Assembly: GCF_006345805.1 (NCBI RefSeq)
Contig: NC_043025.1
Span: 5,580,001-5,644,000 of the forward strand
Direction of reading: 5' to 3'
DNA length: 64,000 bases
Source: Octopus sinensis
Lineage: Eukaryota
Below the pieces are notes generated by a model, which was not told the origin of the DNA, ran no database searches, and saw only the letters and a program-made list of their open reading frames with translations. Of the stretch, positions 14,931 to 61,412 are shown piece after piece. Both the position numbers and the translations under genes were made by a program. Numbering within the stretch: position 1 is the first letter of the stretch; every line of letters begins with the position of its first letter.

Positions 14931-17900
14931 CCAGATCTGTTACTATGCCATACTGCAAACAGACAGAAGGGAAAGGAGCCATGGTGGAGTTGCTGTATAC
15001 ATCCGAGATGACCTCACACCCCAGGTCTTAATGACATACTCAAATTCGGTATGTGACACTTTAATTGTATACATAAGACAACATAATATAGTCATATGAA
15101 ATACATATTGCCCACCTGATGCCCCAAATCACACAGGCAAGTTTGAAGATTGCTTCACAAGAATTAAAGAAATCCTCATGAATCTGGAACACCACGTGAC
15201 CATATTTCTTATGGGTGATTTCAACTTCCCCAACGTCAAATGGCCCGAAGGTCTCCTACTCTCAGGAATGAATCATTGCAAGCAAGTACAGGTGGAGTCC
15301 CTGCTCAACCTCACCAATGCCTTATTCATGGAGCAAGTTGTACGCAAACCAACTAGGGCGAATAACATTCTGGATCTCTGCTTCACGAACAATATAGACA
15401 TCATTCATGATGTGAAAGTGACACCGACATTAGTTTCGGATCACAACATAATAGACCAAAAGGGTACGGGCGTCGCTATATATATACTTATGTATATGTA
15501 AAAAAATACAAACTGGGACAAGAACGCAAAACATTTAGAAGACGATATAAAAAACACGGACAGGACATTCGAAGCCTTCAATCTTCAGTCAAGAACCAGA
15601 TCATCCTCGCAATTTTGGCTGATTAATCTTGAGATTGTTCCGATCTGGCTAGCCCCAAAGGAAAATCTAAGCCAAGCGCATTAGATTCCTTGGAAGAAAG
15701 CCTCGAATGTAGACAAAACAAGGACGGAAAACAGATGATGTTATATATCAGCCAAAATTGTGAGGATGATCCGGTTCTTGACTGAAGATTGAAGGCTTCG
15801 AATGTCCTGTCCGTGTTTTTTGTATCGTCTTCTAAATGTTTTGCGTTCTTGTCCCAGTTTGTATTTTTTTACATCTACATATATATATAGCGGCGCCTGT
15901 ACCCATTTGGTCTTATATGTAAGTACATATTTCTTTAAACTTGGTACGACTCTATAACACTGTCTCTCTCTCCCCCCTCTCCTACATTTCTCTGCCTTTC
16001 ACACTTTGCTCTCCACTTTGATCTGTCTCTTTCTCTCTTTTCTCCTCCTCCCTGTTCCCCTTTCCTCTCTCTTCTCCTCACACGTGACTAACTGACCGAT
16101 TGCCGGCCTTTTGTGCTTAGCAATCGTCACGGCAACACACATTTTTTATCTCCCTGCCCTAAGGCATTTTTCCAACACGCCAGTTCAAAGTTTGCTCGTC
16201 CTGTCGAAAGACGCCTGTGTGTAACGTCCTGTTTTTGTTATTATTATTATCATTATTGTTTTTACGTATTTTTGTATTCTTATTCGTGTAACATCGTCTG
16301 TTTTCCTGTCCTTGTTTTGTATACATTCGAGGCTTTCTTCCAAGGAATCTAATGCGCTTGGCTTAGATTTTCCTTTGGGGCTGGCCAGATCGGAGCAATC
16401 TCAAGATTAATCAGCCGAAATTGCGAGGATGATCCGGTTCTTGATTGAAGGCTTCGAATGTCCCGTCCGTGTTTTTTATATCGTCTTCTAAATGTTTTGT
16501 GTTCTTGTCCCAGTTTGTATTTTTTTACATACGACATAATAGAGCTGTCTATGTTTGGGCCAAAAGTAACCAGAGACATACAGCCTAAAGGAAGCACCTG
16601 AAATCTCTCCAATCTGAACTTCCACAAAGCAGATTGGAAATTGATCCAAAAAGAGATCCTCAGAGAGGACTGGCCGGAATGTCTCTGCACACCAGACATT
16701 GACATGAAGCTAGAATGTTTCATGTCTTCTGTGCAAGCCGTATGCCAGAAATATGTCCCAGAGCACAAGCCAAAACAAATAGGAGCAAGATTCCAAGAGA
16801 CATGAAGATCCTCATGAGACGACGGATGAAGGTTGCAAATCGACTCAACCAACATCCCAAAAGTAGCGAAACGTCCCGCCTAAAAACAACAATGATGGAG
16901 ATCGAAAAAAGGCTGCAAAAATCCTATGTGAGGGAGAAAGCAGACAAAGAAGCCTGGGTTATAAAAAAACATTAAATCAAACCCAAAGGCCTTCTTTCAT
17001 TACGCGAAAGAAACAGTCTCAGTACACTACAAGATAGGACCCCTCCTCCAAAAGGATGGCTCCCTCACAGACAGTCCAACTAAGATCAGTGAGATGCTGA
17101 ATGACCAGTTCAAAAGTATATTTACCACCCCGTTGGAACACAGACAAGTGAAAGAACCAGTGGACTTCTTTGCCGCCTCACCTATAACCAGTGAGGCGGT
17201 TACAATGGAATACATTGACATTAGCGAAGAAGATGTCCTACTAGCCATAGATGAAGTGGACACAAACTCAACTGCTGGTCCAGATGGTTTCCCAGCAATC
17301 CTCCTCAAAGCGCGTAAGCATGCCCTGGCCAACCCCCTCAAGATTCTCTTCCAGAGCTTTCTTACAAATGGCAAACTGCCAAGCAAGCTGAAGGAGGGAA
17401 TAATATACCCAATACATAAAGGGGGAAGTAGAGCAGGTGCCAAAAACTATAGGCCTATCTCTCTGACTTCACACATCAGCAAAGTCATGGAACGGATAGT
17501 CAGAAAGAAACTAATCGCATTCCTTGAGGAAAATAACTTGCTGAGTGATACCTAGCATGGTTTTTGACCAGGTAGGAGCTGCCTGACCCAGCTCTTACAA
17601 CATTATGACTGGGTGTTGAGGCAGTTACTCAACAAATCAAATGTGGACGTAATCTACCTTGATTTTGCAAAAGCTTTTGACAAGGTGGATCAAGGTATGA
17701 TATGCCACAAACTGCGTGACCTCGGCATAGCTGGAAAACTTGGAGTGTGGTTACATGACTTCCTGAAAGATAGGAGTCAGGCAGTAGTGGTTAATGGAGC
17801 CACCTCTATAAACACACAAATAGTGAGTGGTGTTCCACAGGGTACTGTCTTGGGACCACTGCTTTTTATAGTGGCCCTCTCAGATATGCCCTCAAATGCC

Positions 17901-18895
17901 CGGATAGCCACTCTGGTAAGCTATGCAGACGATACGAAAGTCTCGCAGAAAATACAGAACCCCAGCGATGTTGCACACCTGCAGCAGGAGTTGGACTCAA
18001 TCTACAGATGGGCTGAGAATAACAATATGCAGTTTAATGCTGAAAAATTCCAGGCCCTGCGCTACCAGCATAAAAAAAATGAATATTAAACTTACAGGAT
18101 ACACCGGTCCACAGGGAATTTCAATCCCAGAGCCTAAGTCTGTGAGGGACCTGGGTATCGACATGAGTGAGGATACCTCTTTCCAAGTGCACATTACCAG
18201 GATGGCGACAAAGTTCAGACGACTGGCTGGGTGGATCCCAAGAACATTCAGAACCAGAGATAAGGAAACCATGATGGTCTTCTGGTGGACATTCATCCTC
18301 AGCCGCCTGGATGACTGCTTACAGCTATGGTCACCCACCAGTGTGAAATTAACAGCGGACCTTGAAGCAATGCAGAGAAGATTCACAAAGAAGATCGTCT
18401 CTTTGCAACAGCTCAGCTACTGGGAAAGGTTGAAACAACTAAGACTCTACTCCCTGGAGAGAAGACGGGAGAGGTATGCAGTAATATATGTCTGGAAGAT
18501 CCTGGAAGGAATTGTGCCAAATTTTGACATTGTAAGCTACACCAATGCCAGAACGGGACGACACTGCATAGTGCCAAAGATCCCAGTAATGCCATCACGC
18601 TTCAGGACCAGCTTCTGCAACAGCCTGGGTTTCAAGGGCCCACAGCTTTTTAATATTCTCCCAAAGAGTCTGAGGAACTTGCACAAAGTAGATGTAGCGG
18701 TTTTTAAATCAAAGCTGGACATCTTCCTGTCAAGAGTCCCAGATGAACCTACCTCACGGCAAGAGGTGCAAATGAGAGTAGCAATATCAAACTTCTTTCT
18801 TCACCAAATGCCACATATTGGAGGAGGCTCTTCATAATAACAGTGTAGCACAAAACGGCGGTGCTCCAGCATGGCCACAGCTCTGAGCTGAAACA
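14930..18895 (+). mobile_element. 5'-truncated, disabled CR1-group LINE (APE endonuclease plus RT)
   Basis: MGDFNFP, ILDLCFTN, SDHNII, NYRPISLTS, DFAKAFDKV, GVPQGTVLGPLLF and YADD motifs. In-frame stops near 17553 and frameshifts. Interrupted at 15456-16533. Confidence 0.92.
15456..16533. mobile_element. Non-coding composite insertion with inverted segments (Penelope-like pLTR or MITE-like)
   Basis: Flanked by the direct repeat ACATAATAGA (15446-15455 and 16534-16543). 15494-15740 is the reverse complement of 16290-16530, and 15456-15630 is the reverse complement of 15740-15912. Confidence 0.75.
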
Positions 18896-18912
18896 GGAAG
18901 AAAAAAAAACAT

Positions 18913-18944
<32 letters not shown>

Positions 18945-19034
18945 ACACACATATATATACACACACACACACACACATATATATACACAACATACATATA
19001 TATATATACACAACATACATATATATATATATAT

Positions 19035-22000
19035 ATGACACTCTACTGCAGACTACCTCATTGGCGAACTCTACTGCAGACTACCTCATTGGCGAACGAC
19101 AGAGACCTTATCTTTGTGGCTGGTGACTTCAATGGTCACGTTGGACGACATGCTGGGGGCTTCCATGGTGTACATGGAGGCTATGGCTATGGCTCCCGCA
19201 ACGAGGAGGGAACCAGGCTGCTGGAGTTCTGCGATGCAAATAATCTTATGATTTGCAACACTAACTTCAGGAAACCTACCAGCCACCTAGTCACTTACCG
19301 ATCGGGCCAACATACCAGCCAAATTGACTACATCCTTACAAGGCAAAGGGAGAGATGGCTGCTTATAAATGCCAAAACCTTCCCAGGTGAAGAATGTACC
19401 CCACAACATAGACTGGTAGTTAGTGACTTTAGGATCAGGACTAGGAGGACAACCAGAAGACGACAAATATGGAGAAGAAGGATCTGGAAGCTTAAAGATC
19501 CTGCAAATGGACAGAGATTTAGGGACATATTACTTGAAGCCTCTGACGAAGTAGAAGGGGATAGAGCATCACAGGGGGTAGAAGACAGCTGGACGTTTCT
19601 AAGGGACAACCTGCTGAGAGCCACTGACCAGATCTGTGGCTGGTGCAAAGTCCCCTCTCGACCTAGAATAACGTGGTGGTGGAACAATATTGTAGACAGG
19701 GCTATTAGAGAAAAGAGACAGGCTTGGAAGGTCTGGAAAAAGGGGGGTAGCAGGGAATTGTATCAGACTGCCAAAAGAGAAGCTAGGAGACAGGTTTATT
19801 TAGCCAGAGGGGAAGCAGATAAGAAAAAATTTGCCAATGTTCTGCGCCGTGAGGACCAAAGACTGGAGGTGTTTCGTGTTGCAAGACAGTGTTTGAGAGA
19901 GAATCGTGATGTGGTAGGAGAGAAGTGTGTTCGCATGGAAGATGGTTCACTTGCGCTAAATGAGGATGCGAAGAGAGAGGTTTGGAGATGCCACTATGAA
20001 AGGTTGCTGAATGAAGAAAATGAATGGGATAAAGAGAGTCTGCCGAATGTTGACCCAACAGAGGGACCAGCTATCCGAGTTGATAGTTCTGTGGTAGCTA
20101 AGGCAATTAGAAGCATGAAGACAGGGAAAGCCCCAGGCCCATCAGGAATCACTGCAGAGATGCTCAAAATGTCTGGTAGTGTCGGCTATAGCCTAGTCAC
20201 CCATATAGTTAATCAGGTGATACACAAAGGGGTCATACCCAATGACTGGTGTAGCAGTATAATAGTCAACTGCTACAAAGGTAAAGGTGATGCCCTAGAT
20301 ACAAATAACTACAGAGGTATCAAGCTGTTGGACCAGGTGATGAAGGTTACGGAGAGGGTCATAGCCCAACTAATTAGAGAGAGAGTTAGTTTAGATGAGA
20401 TGCAGTTTGGGTTTGTGCCAGGGAAAAGTACTACTGATGCTATATTCCTGGTAAGGCAGCTACAGGAGAAATACCTAGCCAAAGATAAGCCCCTGTACCT
20501 GGCTTTTGTTGACATGGAGAAAGCCTTCGACAGGGTCCCCCGATCCCTTATCTGGTGGGCAATGAGAAAACTAGGGATAGATGAATGGTTAGTGAGAGCT
20601 GTGCGGGCCATGTATAGGGACGCCGCTAGTAGGGTGAGGGTTGGAAATGAGTACAGTGAAGAATTCCGGGTAGAGGTAGGGGTCCACCAAGGCTCAGTAC
20701 TCAGCCCCCTCCTATTTATCATAGTCCTCCAGGCAATAACGGAGGAATTCAAGACAGGATGCCCTTGGGAGCTCCTCTATGCTGATGACCTTGCTCTAAT
20801 TGCTGAGTCGCTATCAGAACTGGAGGAGAAGTTTCAGGTGTGGAAACAAGGATTAGAATCGAAGGGCCTCAGAGTCAATCTAGCTAAAACCAAAGTCGTA
20901 ATCAGTAGGAAGGTAGACAAATCACAAACACCTTCAGGTAGATGGCCCTGCTCGATCTGTAGAAAAGGTGTAGGTAGAAACTCTATAAGATGCACCAAGT
21001 GTAAGCTATGGACACATAAGAGATGCAGCAATGTCAAAGGAAGGCTAACTAGGAAGATGGTTTTTGTATGTGGCAGATGCTCAGGAACAATAAACACTGA
21101 AAATGCTCTGAGACCAACTTCCGTCACTTTCCAGGGAGAAAAACTAGAAATAGTTGATAGTTTCCGTTACCTAGGTGACCAAGTCAGCAGCGGGGGTGGG
21201 TGTGCTGAAAGTGTAACTGCTAGAGTAAGAATAGCTTGGGCAAAGTTCAGAGAGCTCTTACCTCTGCTGGTGACAAAAGGCCTCTCGCACAGAGTGAAAG
21301 GCAGACTGTATGATGCGTGTGTACGAACAGCCATGCTACATGGCAGTGAAACATGGGCCGTGACTGCTGAGGATATGCGTAAGCTCGCTAGAAATGAAGC
21401 CAGTATGCTCCGATGGATGTGTAATGCCGGTACTCACACTCGGCAGAGTGTAAGTACCTTGAGAGAAAAGCTGGACCTAAGAAGCATCAGTTGTGGTGTG
21501 CAAGAGACGTTTGCGCTGGTATGGTCATGTGGCGAGAATGGATGAAGATAGTTGTGTGAAAAAGTGCCACACCCTAGTGGTTGAGGGAACCTGTGGAAGA
21601 GGCAGACCCAGGAAAACCTGGGACGAGGTGGTGAAGCACGACCTTCGAACTTTAGGTCTCACTGAGGAAATGACTAGAGACCGAGACCTCTGGAAGTGTG
21701 CTGTGCGCGAGAAGACCGGCAGGACAAGTGAGTCCACAACCCGTGCCTTCTACATGGGATGGAGCCAGCCTACGTATGCATACCTTCCCTTCTTGGGACA
21801 CAAAACTCTACTTGTGAAGACGTGTTGAGGCAAGTGAGGATCAGAATCGAAATCGATCAATGGAAATTGCGGATGTGCTACCAGTGCCGGTGGCATGTCG
21901 AAACTCTGCTTGTGAAGACCCATTGAGGCAAGTGAGGATCAGAATCGAAATCGATCAATGGAAATCGATCAATGGAAATTGCAGATGTGTTACCAGTGCC

Positions 22001-22340
22001 GGTGGCATGTAAGAGAACTTTCCGTTTCGCGACCGTTGCCAGCACCGCCCCGTTTCGTGTCCGTTGCCAGCCTCGCCTGGCCCTCGTGCCGGTGGCACAT
22101 AAAAAGCACCATCCGTTCGTGGCCGTTTGCCAGCTCTGTCTGGCACCAGTGCGGGTGGCACGTAAAAAGCACCCACTACACTCACGGAGTGGTTGGCGTT
22201 AGGAAGGGCATCCAGCCGTAGAAACACTGCCAGATTTGACTGGGCCTGATGAAGCCTTCTGGCTTCAGACCCCAGTAGAACCGTCCAACCCATGCTAGCA
22301 TGGAAAACGGACGCTAAATGATGATGATGATGATGATGAT
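19035..22340 (+). mobile_element. RTE-clade LINE, 5'-truncated, near-intact ORF with one frameshift near 21500, modular 3' UTR and (GAT)n tail
   Basis: AGDFNGHVG, QIDYIL, NYRGIKLL, QFGFVPG, DMEKAFD, GVHQGSVLSP, LLYADD, a Cys-rich finger (CSIC...CTKC...HKRC...CGRC) and RLRWYGHV in the shifted frame. Confidence 0.95.
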
Positions 22341-22695
22341 ATATATATATATATACATACATACATACATATATGTATATATACATACATACATATATGT
22401 ATATATATATACATACATATATGTATGTATATATATACATACATATATGTATATATATATACATATATATATATACATACACACACATATATGTATATAT
22501 CTATATATATACACACACACACACACACATATATATTTACATATATATACATATACATATATGTATATATACACATATATATACATATATATATATACAC
22601 ATATATACATACATATATATATACATATATATATACTATATATATATATATATACATACATATATATATATATAATATACATATATATATATAAC

Positions 22696-23234: not shown

Positions 23235-25590
23235 CCCTCAGTAGCTGCCCAACCTCCTCTGCTGAAGTAGGTGGGACTATATCAGGGAAGCCTTGTATAC
23301 GACATCAATGGATACTTTCAGCATGAGAGAAAGGCAAAACCCAGATTGGTTCAATGCTGGGCTCTCAGAGCTGGAGCCAGTTATCGAAGCAAAGCGTGCA
23401 GCTCTGATGCAATACAAGAGTGACTCTTCTACAAAGTCACTCGAAGAACTCAGAAAGGCACGAAATAAAACCCAACTGACAGCCAGACGCTGTGCAAATA
23501 GGTATTGGCAGGAAATCTGTCAGAGTATCCAGTCAGCTGCTGACAGGGGCGACACCAGTGGGATGTATGCCGGTTTGAAGAAGGCCCTCGGTCCATCCGC
23601 AACCAAGTCAGCCCCTCTGAAATCAACTACTGGAGATCTCATCAGGGATCAAGGCAAGCAAATGGATAGATGGGTGGAGCACTACCAGGATCTCTACTCA
23701 CGGGAGACTACAGTAGCTGAGGCTGCATTGAGAGTGTCAAGATCTTGCCAGTCATGTGCGAACTTGACAGTCCGCCATCTATAGCAGAGCTCACCAAGGC
23801 TGTTGACTCCCTAGCAAGAAATAAGGCTCCGGGAAAAGACGGCATCCCCTCAGAGATCATCAAAGCCGGCAAAAACACCATCCTGCTTCGGCACCTTCAT
23901 GAGCTTCTGTGTCGGTGCTGGGAAGAGGGTACAGTCCCTCAGGATATGCGGGATGCTAACATCATTACGCTTTACAAAAACAAAGGTGACCGTGGTGATT
24001 GTAACAATTACCGTGGTATATCCCTTCTAAGCACTGTTGGAAAGACCTTTGCCCGCGTTATCCTGGCCAGGCTACAACTACTTGCTTCTCGAATCTATCC
24101 GGAATCGCAGTGTGGCTTTAGAAGAAGCAGATCAACTATTGATATGATATTCTCCATACGCCAACTTCAGGAGAAGTCCAAAGAGCAGAAAATGCCATTA
24201 TATATGGCCTTCATTGATCTAACAAAGGCTTTTGACTCGGTAAGCAGAACAGGCCTCTTCCTCCTGCTCCAAAAAATCAGATGTCCACCAAAGCTGCTGA
24301 GGATCATCAAGTCTTTCCATGATGACATGCAAGGCACCATACAGCACAACAGTTCAACATCAGCCGCCTTCCAAATAAAAAACGGGGTAAAGCAAGGTTG
24401 TGTCCTCGCTCCTACATTGTTTGGCATCTTCTTCTCGCTCTTACTTTCACATGCCTTTCAGACATCAGATGATGGAGTGTTTCTGCACAGTAGAAGTGAC
24501 GGGAAACTGTTCAATCTCTCGCGCCTGCGTGCCAAGACCAAAATCAAAAACGTCCTGATCAAGGAGATGTTATTTGCTGATGATGCCGCTCTGGTAACAC
24601 ACACAGAAGAAGCCCTCCAAAGGCTCATTAACTGTTTTGAGCAAGCATGTAACGACTTTGGCTTAGCTATCAGCCTTAAGAAGACCAACATCATTGGCCA
24701 GGCTACATCGGACATACCAAACATACATATTGGAGACCACAGATTACAAGAGGTGGAGAAGTTTACCTATCTGGGCTCTACCGTCACCTACAACCTATCC
24801 CTTGACGCTGAGCTCAATATACACATTGGCAAGGCAGCTGCTGCGATGGCCCAACTCTCCAAACGGGCTTCGGACAACAATAAGCTTACCAAGACCACGA
24901 AAATGAAGATCTACCAGGCATGTGTACTCAGCACTCTACTGTATGGAAGTGAGACTTGGACGCTATACACACGCCAAGAGCGTCGCCTAAACATCTTTCA
25001 CCTGCGCTGCTTCCGAAAAATCCTCCGCATCAAATGGCAGGATCATATCCCCAACAAAGATGTCCTCAAGCAAGCAGGAATACCAAGCATGTTTGCACTC
25101 CTCACACAAAGACATATGAGATGGCTTGGGCATGTTAGCCGTATGGAAGATGGCAGAATCCCCAAGGACATACTCTATGGAGAGCTTGCTAGGGGTACTA
25201 GGTCTGTGGGTAGGCCAATCTTACGTTACAAGGATGTTTGCAAAAGGGACATGAAGGCCTGCAACATCAATATTAGCGGTTGGGAAGCAATTGCCAGCAA
25301 CCGTGGTGATTGGCGACGTACCTTAAAAGAGGGAATACAAAGGAGTGACAGAGAGAGAGGAGAAATGGAAAGACAAGAAAAGACGTCAACAAGAAACTAT
25401 GACATTACAACCAGCCAGGACAAGTCTTCGCTACATTTGCGGCACCTGCCAGAGGAAGTGTTTGTCCAGGATAGGATTACACAGCCACAGCAGGAAATGT
25501 ATCAGGACATGAAATATAAAAGCTGGACTAGACTACTTTGTGCGCAACTCCATTGTCTCCCGAGACAGAAAGGATGCCAATACCAACACC
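23235..25590 (+). mobile_element. RTE (BovB-like) LINE, 5'-truncated, two frameshifts
   Basis: NYRGISLLS, PESQCGFR, DLTKAFD, GVKQGCVLAP, LFADD and RWLGHV. C-terminal CGTCQRKCLSRIGLHSHSRKC lies in a shifted frame after about 25365. 3' end CCATTGTCTCCCGAGACAGAAAGGATGCC. Confidence 0.95.
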
Positions 25591-25747
25591 ATATACACAT
25601 ATATATATATATACATATATACAAATATATATATATATATATATATGTGTGTCACAAGTACAGGTGAGGTCACTTTGGGCAAGGTTCTACAGCTAGATGC
25701 CCTTCTGAAGAACACCAGCCACTTTACTTTGTGGACTGGGTGCTTTT

Positions 25748-33974: not shown

Positions 33975-34790
33975 TTAAGGAAGTTTCTCAATTGGATCAG
34001 TCAGGAGCAAGTTGTCGGAATTACAGGCAAACTTCAGGCAGAATTTATTGCATTTGTGTTTCGCCATGAATGTCTTAATTCCACAGACCCCCTCGTCACC
34101 CCATTCTCTGAATTCATGTTTGCGGGAGTGGACAGTTGGACAGGAGAGGCAACAGGTTCGGTCGCGCACCTCCCCACGGAAGTCGCAAAGAATCATCTCG
34201 CCGTGCATCACGACGAAGCTGAAGTGGGAGAGGGCGTCGAGGATGGAGAGGAGGCGGCTGCTGGGAGCTCCGGGATTGTTGTTGTCGATGCAGGCGCCAC
34301 CGTTGTTGTTGCCGCCGCCGCTGCCGGAGCAGGTGCCGACCATATCGGAGAACCGCTGCCAGCCTGCACCGCCTCCATCCTCCGACTGGAATTCCTCGAC
34401 GACAACAAATTCCTCTTGGCCAAATTCTTTCGGCCCGTTGCGTGCGCACATTCGGTTCAGACTCGATACGCTGTCGATCTGTGCAAGGTGGGGTCGGATA
34501 ACCACCAGGTAGTCATCGTTGAGCACAGATTTGTTAAAGAGGTCGGTGATCTGTTGCTCTAGACTAAGGATGTCGAAATAACTCCTCCAATAACTCTGTT
34601 CCCCGCATGCGTCCTTCTTCACGCGCACCAGGCAACGCTCCCCCTGGCGCGCGCCCTTCCCGTTGAGGAAGCCCTTGTAGAAAAGATGCTCATCAGTCTC
34701 CAACTTTGATTTGTGGCTGAAGCTTGCCCAGTACACCTCTTTCTCTGACCAGTGAAAGTTCAGAGTGCTGTTGTCAAGTTTTAGGTCCAT
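33975..34790 (-). CDS. Alpha-kinase (eEF2K/MHCK/vwkA-like) domain protein, probably catalytically impaired, 271 aa, single coding exon
   Basis: Acceptor ttccaacAG|ATCC at 34808, ATG at 34790, TAA at 33975. Motifs ALSHFSF, ILCDFRG, PTVHS, GDEGVCGI and F..KHKCNKFC are the alpha-kinase C-lobe/zinc signature. GC-rich coding composition in AT-rich surroundings. Confidence 0.85.
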   Translation of the reverse strand: MDLKLDNSTLNFHWSEKEVYWASFSHKSKLETDEHLFYKGFLNGKGARQGERCLVRVKKDACGEQSYWRSYFDILSLEQQITDLFNKSVLNDDYLVVIRPHLAQIDSVSSLNRMCARNGPKEFGQEEFVVVEEFQSEDGGGAGWQRFSDMVGTCSGSGGGNNNGGACIDNNNPGAPSSRLLSILDALSHFSFVVMHGEMILCDFRGEVRDRTCCLSCPTVHSRKHEFREWGDEGVCGIKTFMAKHKCNKFCLKFACNSDNLLLTDPIEKLP

Positions 34791-34794
34791 GATG

Positions 34795-35385
34795 TCACGG
34801 ATTAGGATCTGTTGGAAGAGAGAAAGAAAAAGAGAGCGATTAGGAGGAGGAAAGAAAGGGATCTGTGTGTATGTGTATTGCATGTATGTGAGGAGAGTGT
34901 GTGGATGTATATAGATGTGTGGGTATGTATATGTGAATGACATTTTCACCCAACAACAGAGAATAAGGAAAAAAAATTCATTAATCACGGATTAGGATCT
35001 GTTGAGAGAGAGAAAGAAAGGGAGAGCGATTAGGAGGAGGAAAGGAATAAATGGATCTGTGTGTATGTGTATTGCATGTATGTGAGGGTATATATACATG
35101 AGTGTGTATATGTGAGTGCGTATATGTGAATGACATTTTCGCCCAACAACAGAGAATAAATAAGGAAAAAAATTAATCACGGATTAGGATCTGTTGAGAG
35201 AAAGAAAGAAAGGGAGAGCGATTAGGAGGAGGAAAGGAATAAATGGATCTGTGTGTATGTGTATTGCATGTATGTGAGGGTATATGTGTAGGTGAGTGTG
35301 TATATGTATATAGATGCGTGGGTATGTATATGTGAATGACATTTTCGCCCAACAACAGAGAATAAATAAAGAAAAACAATTCATT
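34795..35385 (-). repeat. About 190-bp tandem triplication containing branch point, polypyrimidine tract and AG acceptor
   Basis: CAG|ATCCTAATCCGTGA occurs with exon boundaries at 34808, 34998 and 35190 (spacing 190/192), each preceded by CCTAAT and a pyrimidine tract on -. Confidence 0.9.
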
Positions 35386-36072: not shown

Positions 36073-36712
36073 TCATCATCATCATCATCATTTAGCATCC
36101 GCTTTCCATGCTGTCATGGGTTGGACGGTTCAACTGGGGTCTGTGAAGCTGGAAGGCTGCATCAGGCCCAGTCAGATCTGGCAGTGTTTCTACGGCTGGA
36201 TGCACTTCCTAACGCCAACCACTCCGTGAGTGTAGTGGGTGCTTTTTACGTGCCACCCGCACAAGTGCCAGACAGAGCTGGCAAACGGACACGAACGGAT
36301 GGTGCTTTTTACGTGTCACCGGCACGGGGGCCAGACGAGGCTGGCAACGGACACGAACGGATGGTGCTTTTACGTGCCACCGACATGGGGGCCAGACAGA
36401 GCTGGCAAACGGACACGAACGGATGGTGCTTTTACGTGACACCGGCACGGGGGCCGGACAAGGCTGGCAAACGGCCACGAACGGATGGTGCTTTTACGTG
36501 TCACCGGCATGGGGGCCAGACAAGGCTGGCAAACGGCCACGAATGGATGGTGCTTTTACGTGTCACCGGCACGGGGGCCAGACAAGGCTGGCAAACGGCC
36601 ACGAACGGATGGTGCTTTTACGTGTCACCGGCACGGGGGCCAGACAAGGCTGGCAAACGGACACGGTCGGATGATGCTTTTACGTGTCACCGACACGGGG
36701 TCAGACATGCAA
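36073..36712 (-). mobile_element. Family C copy with about 8 tandem 62-bp modules
   Basis: (CAT)n tail. gatggtgctttt recurs at 36298, 36360, 36422, 36484, 36546, 36608 and 36670. Confidence 0.85.
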
Positions 36713-51943: not shown

Positions 51944-52619
51944 GATACATTCACATACACCACACGCACACCTCAAATGGTTCACTAACTATATTTATAA
52001 ACACAATCGCGAAATAATACTCAAAATATTTTCTCCTTTCATTTTCTCCACACATACCATACGTGTGCAATTATATACACACACACACACACACACACAT
52101 AATATATATATATTATATATATATATATAATATATATTATATCATATATGCATGTATGTATGTATGTATGTATGTATGTATGTATGTATGTATGTATATG
52201 GTGTGTATGTATGTATGTATGTATGTGTGTATGTATGTATGTATGTATGTATGTATGTATGTATGTATGTGTGTATGCTCTTCTATCTTGCAAAAAGGAC
52301 TTACCTCTAATTTGAAACGAAGGGTGTTAAAAAAGAAAGTCGCGTATTTTTTCGTCCTTCTTACACCATTTTTGCATCGAAGCATCCCGTTCCACCACCA
52401 CCACCATCACCACCGGCAACTTCACCACCACCACCACCACCATCTCGGCTACGGCAGCGCCGTCCCCCGTCGCCGCCTCCAGTATTTCTTCTTCTACTGC
52501 CTTCATCAATAACAAAGCAGCAGCGGCAGCAGCAGTCGCAATTGTAGCAGCATGACCATGTGTAGTAGTAGTAGTAGTAGTAGCAGTAGCAGCAGAAGAA
52601 GAATTGATTATCAAACAAC

Positions 52620-53563
52620 ACAGTCGTCACCGCTGCCTCCGCCACTGCCGCCGCCTCCACCGCCGCCACCGCCGCCGCCACTGTCATCACCACCACCGCC
52701 GCCGCCACCACCACCATCACCAACATAGTTTTCACAACCACCACCGCCGCCGCCACTATCATCACCACCACCGCCGCCGCCGCCGCCACTATCATCACCA
52801 CCACCGCCGCCGCCGCCGCCACTATCATCACCACCACCACCGCCGCCGCCGCCACTATCATCACCACCACCACCGCCGCCGCCGCCACTATCATCACCAC
52901 CACCACCGCGCCGCCGCCACTATCATCACACCACCACCACCGCCGCCGCCACTATCATCACCACCACCGCCGCCGCCGCCGCCACTATCATCACCACCAC
53001 CACCGCCGCCGCCGCCACTATCATCACCACCACCGCCGCCGCCGCCGCCACTATCATCACCACCACCACCGCCGCCGCCACTATCATCACCACCACCACC
53101 GCCGCCGCCGCCACTATCATCACCACCACCGCCGCCGCCGCCACTATCATCACCACCACCACCGCCGCCGCCGCCGCCACCATCATCACCACCACCGCCG
53201 CCGCCGCCACTATCACCACCACCACCGCCGCCGCCGCCACTACCACCACCACCACCACTGTCACCACCGTCACCCCCACCCCCAATCAACATCGTCTCCA
53301 CCACCCCCGTCATCAATAGCAAACAGCATCATATTCAATAGTCAATCACAACAGCAGCATCAGCACTGATTTTTGCCAACACCCGTCCTACCCCGTTCTA
53401 ACCGCGCCATCGTCATCGATAACACAAGCGTCAGCATCATTCCACAGCAGCCATCATCATCACCATCATCATTACCACCGTCATCATCGTTTGCAAGACC
53501 ATATACTCTGGGTAGTAGTAGTAGTAATAGTAGTAGTAGTAGTAGCGGTGGTGGTGGTGGTAA

Positions 53564-53662
<99 letters not shown>

Positions 53663-54141
53663 CATCAACAGCAGCAGCAGCAACCGAAAACTGCTAATCG
53701 ACGACGACGCCACCACCACCGCCGCCGCCGCCACCGCCACCATTACCACTACCACCACCACCACCACCACCTACTACACTATTCGCTGGAGCAACTCTAT
53801 TGCATCATCATCATCATCACCATCATAAGCGGCAGCAGCAGGAGTATCGGCTGAAGCGGTGGTGGCGGTGGGGGAGAGGAGAGGGGGGGCAGCCTATACG
53901 GCATCGATAATGTCTCTCTCGTTTTAACGCTTACCACACAACACCGAGCGGCTTACATCACAAATGTAGTCGCAGTAGTAGTAGTAGTAGTAGTGGTAGT
54001 AATAATATCGACCGCAGCAACAGTCGTAGTGGTAGTAGTAGTAGTATTAGAAGTATTTGTAGTAACAGCAAGGGCTGTAGCGGCAACAGCAGCAGCAGCA
54101 GTAGTAGTAGTAGTAGTAGTAGCAGTAACAACAGCAGCAGC

Positions 54142-54178
<37 letters not shown>

Positions 54179-54186
54179 ACAACAGC

Positions 54187-54217
<31 letters not shown>

Positions 54218-54225
54218 ACAACAGC

Positions 54226-54259
<34 letters not shown>

Positions 54260-54267
54260 ACAACAGC

Positions 54268-54355
<88 letters not shown>

Positions 54356-54382
54356 ACAACAGCAGCAGCAGCAGTAGTGTTG

Positions 54383-54427
<45 letters not shown>

Positions 54428-54500
54428 ATTCATGCAGTTGTAATAAGAGACCCAGCTATTGGACAACTACCACCACCAGCACTACTACTACTACTATAAC
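52620..54500. repeat. GC-rich 27-30-bp minisatellite (52620-53280) and TAG/CAG/GGT trinucleotide tracts
   Basis: caccaccaccgccgccgccgccactatcat units; (TAG)n runs. Confidence 0.92.
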
Positions 54501-61246: not shown

Positions 61247-61412
61247 TTTCATGTAAATACATTCCTTCTCTCTACTTTGATTGTTCTTCTTTTTCGGATA
61301 AAAGATCCATTGACGAGATATAATATATATATATACATTACAAAATGTAATCACATGTGAAACGTTGGTGATTTTTTTCTCTCTGTCTTCCTTTTCTATT
61401 GGACTTTCCTCT

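What the first reader, a model, noticed from the sequence alone, without database searches (positions are those of the whole stretch)
33975..34790. Alpha-kinase with dismantled catalytic motifs but an intact zinc module: a candidate alpha-pseudokinase
Seen versus canonical alpha-kinase motifs: the P-loop FxxG is replaced by HKSKLETDE; the ATP-binding Lys of VVK appears as Arg (CLVR); KFNSN becomes RFSDM plus a Gly/Asn insertion; DLQG becomes DFRG (Asp kept, Gln lost); LTDP becomes LSCP (metal-binding Asp to Cys). SH, DxGxxG and HxCNxxC are retained and the ORF is uninterrupted. Established: alpha-kinases (eEF2K, TRPM6/7, ALPK1, MHCK, VwkA) need these Lys and Asp residues. Inference: a maintained non-catalytic scaffold or ligand sensor. 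Pseudo-members are well known among ePKs but little described for this fold.
Basis: partly seen in the sequence, partly recalled or inferred. Interest (0 to 1): 0.7.

Follow-up and report, generated by a model that had tools for sequence, protein, structure and literature searches.

The report
Octopus alpha-kinase-fold pseudokinase gene
This octopus gene encodes a small protein with the alpha-kinase fold and its zinc site but without most residues needed to bind ATP and transfer phosphate; it has been conserved across octopuses, cuttlefish and squid-like relatives, so it is very probably a working non-enzymatic "pseudokinase" of unknown role.

Summary
On the minus strand, 33978-34790 (stop 33975-33977) is an intact 271-codon ORF. 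It matches Pfam Alpha_kinase (E 9e-18), and its AlphaFold model (pLDDT 85.6) superposes on MHCK-A, TRPM7, eEF2K and ALPK1.

A 111-sequence alignment anchored on MHCK-A gives these equivalences:
- P-loop PFxxG becomes SKLET.
- K645 becomes R56.
- KFNSN becomes RFSDM.
- D756 is kept as D203.
- Q758 becomes R205.
- D766 becomes C217.

The four zinc ligands and the DxGxxG loop are intact.

The window is from Octopus; an identical O. vulgaris protein is annotated only as "to kinase". Orthologues exist in another octopod, in Sepia esculenta (spliced larval transcripts) and in other decapodiforms. dN/dS is 0.02-0.05, so this is not a pseudogene. The decapodiform orthologues, and the sister paralogue found in other octopods, have Asn at the catalytic Asp.

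Loss of catalysis in a maintained protein is therefore the best reading, but it is inferred, not measured. The wider group of stand-alone lophotrochozoan alpha-kinase domains is degenerate in 58 of 107 representatives. ALPK3 is the published precedent, so this is a new member of a known kind. Function is unknown.

The parts
33978..34790 (-). Complete coding sequence (271 codons) of a stand-alone alpha-kinase-fold protein, all in one exon. It is identical to P0184, and to O. vulgaris 'to kinase' CAI9744376.1 apart from that model's 8 extra N-terminal residues.
33975..33977 (-). TAA stop codon.
34791..34808 (-). First 18 nt of the last exon (ATCCTAATCCGTGACATC, in frame as ILIRDI). This is either 5' leader or coding sequence if translation starts in an upstream exon, as in the O. 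vulgaris model MA|ILIRDIMDL.
34809..34860 (-). 3' end of the intron: CTAAT branch-point-like element, polypyrimidine tract and CAACAG acceptor.
   Evidence: The acceptor position agrees with P0185 and with the decapodiform exon boundary 18 nt upstream of the ATG.
34695..34709 (-). Residues S28-K-L-E-T32, which occupy the P-loop PFxxG position (MHCK-A P585-G589). The Gly is replaced by Thr.
34623..34625 (-). R56 (CGC) in the column of the ATP-binding lysine (MHCK-A K645 by alignment; equivalence to TRPM7 K1646 is from general knowledge).
   Evidence: TRPM7 K1646R abolishes kinase activity (PMC4274504).
34395..34397 (-). E132, the hinge glutamate (MHCK-A E713), retained.
34341..34355 (-). R146-F-S-D-M150 in place of KFNSN.
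34260..34385 (-). Octopod-specific Gly/Asn-rich low-complexity insert (residues 136-177). It is a coding GGC/AAC microsatellite and is predicted to be disordered.
   Evidence: (pLDDT below 50 at residues 152-167).
34224..34229 (-). S188-H189. H189 is the first zinc ligand (MHCK-A H742).
34173..34184 (-). D203-F-R205-G206, the catalytic-loop remnant (MHCK-A D756-x-Q758-G). Asp is kept in octopods and is Asn in decapodiform orthologues. Gln is replaced by Arg.
34137..34148 (-). L215-S-C217-P218. C217 sits at the metal-binding, phospho-accepting Asp (MHCK-A D766).
34080..34097 (-). D232-E-G-V-C-G237, the retained DxGxxG (N/D) loop.
34038..34058 (-). H245-K-C247-N-K-F-C251, the remaining three zinc ligands (MHCK-A H794, C796, C800).
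34795..35381 (.). Three tandem copies of a 192-bp unit. Each duplicates the intron end, the acceptor and the exon start. Only the proximal copy is joined to the ORF.

Best explanation
This is the last exon, carrying the whole CDS, of a real, expressed, coleoid-cephalopod-specific gene. The gene encodes a stand-alone alpha-kinase-fold domain that has lost phosphotransfer chemistry, i.e. an alpha-family pseudokinase.

Shown:
- The fold and the zinc-binding module are intact.
- The P-loop Gly, the ATP-binding Lys, the Lys/Asn of KFNSN, the metal-ligand Gln and the metal/phospho-acceptor Asp are all replaced.
- The catalytic Asp is not conserved among orthologues.
- The protein is nevertheless under strong purifying selection, strongest in the remodelled N-lobe.

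Inferred:
- It does not bind Mg-ATP productively.
- It acts by binding. The zinc-stabilised C-lobe with its retained DxGxxG (N/D) loop, together with the almost invariant remodelled N-lobe, would form an interaction surface for a partner protein or peptide. The protein would then be an adaptor, a decoy, or an allosteric regulator, possibly of catalytically competent alpha-kinase paralogues.
For: - Domain and fold: Pfam Alpha_kinase E 8.7e-18. The AF2 model has pLDDT 85.6 and pTM 0.82. The 41 best Foldseek PDB hits are all alpha-kinase domains (MHCK-A, Entamoeba alpha kinase, TRPM7, eEF2K, ALPK1), with TM scores mostly about 0.5-0.6 (best 0.64) and probability 1.0.
- Residue equivalences come from the 111-sequence profile aligned to MHCK-A.
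- Consequences of the substitutions: TRPM7 K1646R gives complete loss of kinase activity (PMC4274504). MHCK-A D766A and D756A are deposited as 'inactive'.
- Orthologues: the decapodiform orthologues and the sister paralogues P0020 and P0026 carry Asn at the catalytic Asp, and positions 205 and 218 vary.
- All 12 relatives with Arg in the Lys column lack at least one other catalytic residue.
- Selection: dN/dS is 0.023 and 0.045. The N-lobe dN is 0.13-0.15 against 0.32-0.35 for the C-lobe.
- Expression and splicing: Sepia esculenta larval RNA-seq contigs from several runs, and alternative splicing in a second decapodiform.
- Precedent: ALPK3.
Against: - No biochemical data exist.
- The octopus protein keeps the catalytic Asp (D203), the hinge Glu (E132) and a basic residue (R56) at the Lys position. 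It also has an invariant K58 on the same strand, which might compensate in the way the relocated lysine does in WNK kinases.
- C217 is invariant, which hints at some chemistry or metal binding rather than simple loss.
- Expression in octopus itself was not shown: the octopod contigs are collinear with genomic DNA.
- The binding partner, and hence the mechanism, is pure inference.
Confidence: 0.75

Rival explanations
1. It is still an active, non-canonical alpha-kinase. R56 and/or the neighbouring invariant K58 would bind ATP, and D203 would act as the base, at least in octopods.
For: - D203, E132 and the N/D loop are retained.
- K58 is invariant in the family, in a column that is usually Phe.
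- dN/dS in the C-lobe is still low, 0.028.
Against: - Five separate ATP/Mg-site elements are changed at once.
- K-to-R alone kills TRPM7 kinase activity, and D766A alone inactivates MHCK-A.
- Decapodiform orthologues with more than 60% identity have Asn at position 203 and no Lys or Arg at position 146, so catalysis cannot be the conserved function of the family.
Confidence: 0.1
2. It is a non-catalytic small-molecule (nucleotide or metabolite) sensor. The remodelled cleft would bind a ligand without transferring phosphate, and the signal would pass through a conformational change.
For: - The cleft-lining substitutions in the N-lobe (SKLET, R56, K58) and C217 are themselves invariant over the octopod-decapodiform split. 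That suggests a re-purposed pocket rather than a relaxed one.
- The hinge residue E132 is kept.
Against: - Other cleft positions (146-150, 203, 205, 218) vary freely between orthologues.
- No ligand is suggested by any evidence.
- In ALPK1 the ligand is bound by the N-terminal domain, not the kinase domain (general knowledge).
Confidence: 0.12
3. It is a decaying pseudogene or retrocopy that happens to keep an open frame.
For: - The CDS lies in a single exon.
- It is surrounded by microsatellites and retrotransposons.
Against: - dN/dS is 0.02-0.05 with dS of 0.57 to more than 1.5.
- Intact orthologues exist in octopods and decapodiforms.
- A conserved intron lies 18 nt upstream of the ATG, and transcripts are spliced.
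Confidence: 0.01
4. It is only the C-terminal exon of a large multidomain alpha-kinase (a channel-kinase, or an eEF2K- or ALPK-like protein), so it is not a stand-alone protein.
For: - An upstream exon exists, and its position in the octopus genome was not found.
Against: - Decapodiform mRNAs give complete ORFs of 245-324 aa. They have in-frame stops or untranslated sequence upstream, and at most a 53-62 aa N-terminal extension.
- The O. vulgaris model has 279 aa.
- The nearest relatives are also short single-domain proteins.
Confidence: 0.03

Closest known systems
[quoted passage not shown]
   Same: - An alpha-kinase domain with substitutions at conserved interlobe-cleft residues.
- Evolutionarily maintained.
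- A proposed scaffolding role rather than catalysis.
   Different: - ALPK3 is a very large muscle protein.
- It differs at four conserved cleft positions and keeps the predicted catalytic Asp.
- It is not orthologous to this gene.
- The octopus protein is a 271-aa stand-alone domain with a more thorough dismantling: P-loop Gly, Lys, KFNSN, Gln and the second Asp are all replaced.
Catalytically active alpha-kinase domains with solved structures: Dictyostelium MHCK-A (3lkm, 4zmf), Entamoeba alpha kinase (4kuj), TRPM7 ChaK (1ia9), eEF2K, ALPK1
   Same: - The same predicted fold (Foldseek probability 1.0, TM scores mostly about 0.5-0.6, best 0.64).
- The same zinc ligands, hinge Glu and DxGxxG loop.
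   Different: It lacks the equivalents of G589, K645, K722, Q758 and D766. Sequence identity is only 11-18%.
Lophotrochozoan stand-alone 'alpha-protein kinase vwkA-like' / 'eEF2K-like' proteins (scallops, abalones, limpets, Biomphalaria, Nucella, chiton, Lingula)
   Same: - These are the nearest sequence relatives (E 1e-25 to 1e-10 over the full length, 22-31% identity).
- They share the N-terminal NxTL...YWxxF module and the short single-domain architecture.
- 58 of 107 representatives also lack at least one of K, D, Q, D.
   Different: - 49 of 107 keep the full catalytic set.
- Many carry an MG start and PSAP or PPxY tails, which are absent here.
- The cephalopod family is separated from them by a wide gap (E 1e-151 within the family, 6e-25 for the next hit).
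Octopod paralogues: O. bimaculoides LOC106881607 (P0020) and the Argonauta hians protein named LOC115221665 (P0026)
   Same: - They form the sister clade in a neighbour-joining tree.
- They share the P-loop Gly-to-Thr change and the Lys-to-Arg change, and they have Asn at the catalytic Asp.
   Different: - They have also lost the TDP strand and the N/D loop.
- They carry a long His/Tyr/Cys-rich tail ending in PSAPP.

Membership tests
Alpha-kinase domain (Pfam PF02816), fold membership | Significant match to the family profile above the curated threshold | tested here: met
   65.5 bits against a cut-off of 21.3, E 8.7e-18, residues 42-251.
Alpha-kinase domain (Pfam PF02816), fold membership | Three-dimensional fold of solved alpha-kinase domains | tested here: met
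   The AF2 model has pLDDT 85.6. The top 41 Foldseek PDB hits are all alpha-kinases, with E values down to 4e-10.
Alpha-kinase domain (Pfam PF02816), fold membership | C-lobe zinc module (His, then His-x-Cys-x3-Cys) | tested here: met
   H189, H245, C247 and C251 are present. H189, C247 and C251 are invariant in 111 sequences, and the four align to MHCK-A H742, H794, C796 and C800. Zinc binding itself was not measured.
Catalytically competent alpha-kinase | ATP-binding lysine (MHCK-A K645 / TRPM7 K1646) | tested here: not met
   R56 occupies this column in all family members. TRPM7 K1646R is kinase-dead.
Catalytically competent alpha-kinase | P-loop PFxxG glycine | tested here: not met
   T32 stands in a column that is Gly in 98 of 107 relatives and in MHCK-A.
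Catalytically competent alpha-kinase | Catalytic-loop Asp and Gln (DxQG; MHCK-A D756 and Q758) | tested here: inconclusive
   The Asp is present in the window (D203) but is Asn in all decapodiform orthologues. The Gln is replaced by R205.
Catalytically competent alpha-kinase | Metal-binding, phospho-accepting Asp of TDP (MHCK-A D766) | tested here: not met
   C217 is invariant in the family. MHCK-A D766A is deposited as inactive.
Catalytically competent alpha-kinase | Measured phosphotransferase activity | not testable with these tools
   This needs the recombinant protein and kinase assays.
Pseudokinase (a maintained, non-catalytic kinase homologue) | A kinase fold with one or more essential catalytic residues missing | tested here: met
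Pseudokinase (a maintained, non-catalytic kinase homologue) | Purifying selection and expression, i.e. not a pseudogene | tested here: met
   dN/dS is 0.023 and 0.045. Spliced transcripts occur in Sepia esculenta and a second decapodiform. Expression in octopus itself was not shown.
Pseudokinase (a maintained, non-catalytic kinase homologue) | Demonstrated lack of catalysis and a defined non-catalytic function | not testable with these tools
   This needs biochemistry and interaction studies.
ALPK3 orthologue | A large multidomain protein orthologous to vertebrate ALPK3 | tested here: not met
   The products are 245-324 aa single-domain proteins. The nearest relatives are lophotrochozoan stand-alone domains.

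The most novel reading that the evidence does not exclude
The cleft has been rebuilt for a new activity rather than emptied.

The substituted residues are fixed over the octopod-decapodiform split: SKLET for the P-loop, R56, K58, and above all an invariant Cys at the exact position of the aspartate that becomes phosphorylated in MHCK-A and eEF2K. The old catalytic-loop neighbours drift.

The domain could therefore be one of the following:
- a redox- or metal-sensing switch;
- a ligand receptor;
- an enzyme with cysteine-based chemistry on the alpha-kinase scaffold.

More broadly, lophotrochozoans would hold a large, unstudied radiation of such re-purposed alpha-kinase domains, since 58 of 107 representative relatives are degenerate.
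Probability: 0.12. Interest if true: 0.7.

Novelty: new member of a known kind. Interest (0 to 1): 0.42.

Why it matters
Pseudokinases of the classical kinase fold are established signalling scaffolds and allosteric regulators. For the alpha-kinase fold, only ALPK3 has been put forward (2022).

This gene offers several things:
- It is a compact, single-domain, strongly conserved second example from a distant lineage.
- It could be a tractable object for asking what an alpha-kinase fold does once catalysis is gone.
- It exposes an uncharacterised lophotrochozoan expansion in which catalytic residues were lost repeatedly.
- It corrects an uninformative database name ("to kinase").

None of this bears on a long-standing open question, and all functional statements are predictions.

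Tried and rejected
- Single-sequence and 4-sequence searches of PDB sequences aligned only the C-lobe. The N-lobe equivalences needed the 111-sequence profile.
- I looked for the upstream exon(s) in the window three ways: with the decapodiform N-terminal extension (tblastn and regular expressions), with decapodiform exon 1 and 2 DNA, and with the N-terminus of P0186. Nothing convincing turned up. The match at 61307-61350(-) is probably chance in AT-rich sequence.
- A second word-index search with the family alignment found no further orthologue clusters.
- Literature searches for the SRA runs behind P0001 and P0003, and for mollusc or lophotrochozoan alpha-kinase studies, found nothing specific.
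- A second zinc site formed by C202, C213, C217 and H221 was considered and dropped. C213 and C217 lie four residues apart on an extended strand, so they cannot chelate together. This could not be checked in 3D.
- Model coordinates are not exposed to scripts, so the side-chain geometry of R56, K58, D203 and C217 could not be examined.

Full report
**What is there.**
On the minus strand, an uninterrupted ORF runs from ATG 34790 to TAA 33977-33975 and encodes 271 residues. It is the only alpha-kinase-like sequence in the window. It matches Pfam Alpha_kinase PF02816 at 65.5 bits, E 8.7e-18, well above the curated cut-off of 21.3 bits. An AlphaFold2 model built on a 111-sequence alignment is confident (mean pLDDT 85.6, pTM 0.82). 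The only disordered stretches are residues 152-167 and the last few residues. Its 41 best Foldseek matches in the PDB are all alpha-kinase domains: MHCK-A, the Entamoeba alpha kinase 4kuj, TRPM7/ChaK, eEF2K and ALPK1. Probability is 1.0 and TM scores are mostly about 0.5-0.6 (best 0.64). Classical kinases follow only at E > 0.01.

**Origin.**
The exact protein is in the NCBI set on a 21.16-Mb contig (P0184). The O. vulgaris entry CAI9744376.1, named only "to kinase", is identical except for eight extra N-terminal residues (MA|ILIRDI-MDL...). The window is therefore an Octopus chromosome segment. It is rich in microsatellites and non-LTR retrotransposons.

**Checking the motif claims.**
A search of 1.84 billion representative proteins with the family profile returned the family itself at E 8e-151, and then, after a wide gap, 980 relatives starting at 6e-25. 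The named relatives are short stand-alone alpha-kinase-domain proteins of molluscs and a brachiopod. They are annotated "alpha-protein kinase vwkA-like", "alpha-protein kinase 1-like" or "eEF2K-like".

I aligned 107 of these with the four family members (A2). The profile of that alignment aligns over its full length with MHCK-A. A chain offset of +534 reproduces the residue numbers D756 and D766 given in the PDB titles, and by the same offset the aligned MHCK-A lysine is K645. The equivalences, with column counts from the 107 relatives, are as follows.

| Canonical element (MHCK-A) | Relatives (of 107) | Window protein |
|---|---|---|
| P-loop PFxxG (G589) | Gly in 98 | S28-K-L-E-T32 |
| ATP-binding Lys (K645) | K 95, R 12 | R56 |
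| Hinge Glu (E713) | kept | E132 |
| FqKFNSN | canonical | W-Q-R146-F-S-D-M150 |
| Catalytic Asp (D756) | D 62, G 22, N 18 | D203 |
| Metal-ligand Gln (Q758) | Q 74 | R205 |
| Metal/phospho-acceptor Asp (D766) | D 53 | C217 |
| DxGxxG loop | kept | D232, G234, G237 |
| Zinc ligands (H742, H794, C796, C800) | H189, C247, C251 invariant in all 111; H245 in 110 | H189, H245, C247, C251 |

My initial suspicion that F37-Y-K-G40 was the real FxxG was wrong: that Gly belongs to a different conserved column.

**Is it maintained?**
Orthologues were found in:
- a second octopod (P0001, 97% identical);
- probably O. bimaculoides (P0186, a fragment);
- Sepia esculenta (P0002 and 11 close variants);
- at least one further decapodiform (P0003, P0179, P0194).

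dN/dS is 0.023 between the window and the other octopod (dN 0.013, dS 0.57), and 0.045 between the two decapodiforms. Synonymous sites are saturated between octopods and decapodiforms.

The Sepia contigs come from runs that papers identify as larval transcriptomes. In the other decapodiform, three contig types share the last exon but differ upstream exactly at a boundary 18 nt before the ATG:
- exon 1 joined directly to the last exon;
- exon 1 plus a cassette exon that adds an in-frame 62-aa extension beginning MLTK;
- an intron-retaining form.

In the window the same boundary is a CAACAG acceptor at 34809/34808, preceded by a polypyrimidine tract. The O. vulgaris gene model splices exactly there. 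The neutral-decay and retro-pseudogene readings are therefore excluded. Expression in octopus itself was not shown: the octopod Logan contigs are collinear with genomic DNA.

**Is it catalytic?**
This can only be inferred. Evidence against activity:
- Five independent elements of the Mg-ATP site are changed together.
- The Lys-to-Arg change alone gives complete loss of TRPM7 kinase activity (PMC4274504). Equivalence of MHCK-A K645 and TRPM7 K1646 is from general knowledge of the family.
- MHCK-A D766A and D756A are deposited as inactive enzymes.
- All decapodiform orthologues, and the sister paralogues in octopods (O. bimaculoides LOC106881607 and its Argonauta counterpart), have Asn at the catalytic Asp. 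Positions 205 (R/Q/H), 218 (P/S) and the KFNSN remnant also vary. Phosphotransfer therefore cannot be the conserved function of the family.
- All 12 more distant relatives with Arg in the Lys column have also lost at least one of the D, Q, D residues.

Evidence for residual activity, in octopods only: D203, E132, a basic R56, and an invariant K58 two residues further along the same strand, in a column that is usually Phe.

I put the probability that the protein is non-catalytic at about 0.85. The overall explanation, a maintained pseudokinase that acts by binding, I put at 0.75.

**What constrains it?**
The N-lobe (residues 1-133) is almost invariant across the octopod-decapodiform split (dN 0.13-0.15). 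The C-lobe evolves about 2.4 times faster (dN 0.32-0.35). The replacement residues in the N-lobe (SHKSKLETxEHLFYKG, R56, K58) are themselves fixed. So is C217, which sits at the aspartate seen phosphorylated in MHCK-A (4zmf) and eEF2K (9pcq). This pattern points to a re-purposed rather than merely relaxed cleft and N-lobe surface. The likeliest mode of action is binding of a partner protein or peptide. A small-ligand or redox-sensing role cannot be excluded and is the most novel surviving reading.

**Comparison with what is known.**
[quoted passage not shown] The octopus protein works like that concept, but it is not an ALPK3 orthologue. It is a 271-aa stand-alone domain, it is more thoroughly dismantled, and it belongs to a lophotrochozoan radiation.

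In that radiation only 49 of 107 representative proteins keep K, D, Q and D together. I found no paper describing this. The oyster kinome paper merely lists alpha-type atypical kinases whose functions are unknown.

I therefore rate the finding as a new member of a known kind. It is of moderate interest: solidly supported as a candidate, but predicted only, and pseudoenzymes are an expected fraction of any large enzyme family.

**Limits.**
- There is no biochemistry.
- The 5' exon(s) of the octopus gene were not located in the window.
- The species behind P0001 and P0003 were not identified.
- The neighbour-joining tree is a quick distance tree without support values.

Noticed in passing
window 34795-35381: A 192-bp unit is repeated three times in tandem (86% matches). 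Each copy duplicates the intron's branch point, polypyrimidine tract and CAACAG acceptor, plus the first ~15 nt of the last exon. The two distal copies are potential decoy acceptors with no ORF behind them.
   Followed up: partly
window 34260-34385 (residues 136-177): An octopod-specific Gly/Asn-rich insert is encoded by GGC/AAC microsatellite-like sequence inside the CDS. It is predicted to be disordered, is absent from decapodiform orthologues, and is 4 residues shorter in P0186.
   Followed up: partly
loci L012, L015, L016 and L006 (decapodiform transcripts): There is alternative splicing upstream of the kinase-domain exon. A cassette exon supplies an in-frame upstream ATG and a 53-62 aa extension (MLTK...KQHC.TK...KK.K) that is conserved between two decapodiforms. 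Another isoform skips the exon. No counterpart was found in the octopus window.
   Followed up: partly
relatives P0004-P0039, including the octopus paralogue P0020: Many lophotrochozoan stand-alone alpha-kinase-domain proteins begin MGxxxS/T, which resembles an N-myristoylation signal. Many also end in tails with PSAP and PPxY motifs, which resemble ESCRT/NEDD4-binding late-domain motifs. The window protein has neither.
   Followed up: no
alignment A2 (107 representative relatives): Only 49 of 107 keep the Lys, Asp, Gln and Asp together. Loss of the catalytic Asp (to Gly or Asn) and of the TDP Asp is recurrent across mollusc lineages, which suggests many independent alpha-pseudokinases.
   Followed up: partly
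window 17094-21545 (+) and 23293-25667 (+): Two non-LTR retrotransposon remnants. The first has RVT_1 at E 5e-32 with an endonuclease domain and a weak PHD match. The second has RVT_1 at E 9e-34.
   Followed up: partly
window 36238-36707, and related copies near 2400, 22000-22490 and 36120: A 62-bp unit is repeated 7.6 times in tandem, inside a dispersed repeat whose translation recurs (..[23 protein letters not shown]..). It is probably a SINE-like element.
   Followed up: no
window 52000-54500: A GC-rich block (GC 0.53, strong negative GC skew) of long trinucleotide-type repeats. It gives artefactual poly-Pro, poly-Leu, poly-Val and poly-Ser ORFs on both strands.
   Followed up: no
window 61307-61350 (-): A weak, ambiguous similarity to the N-terminal exon of the P0186 gene model (CNVY...SxQW and LHFVM in overlapping frames), in AT-rich sequence. 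It is probably chance, and it is the only candidate found for a 5' exon.
   Followed up: partly
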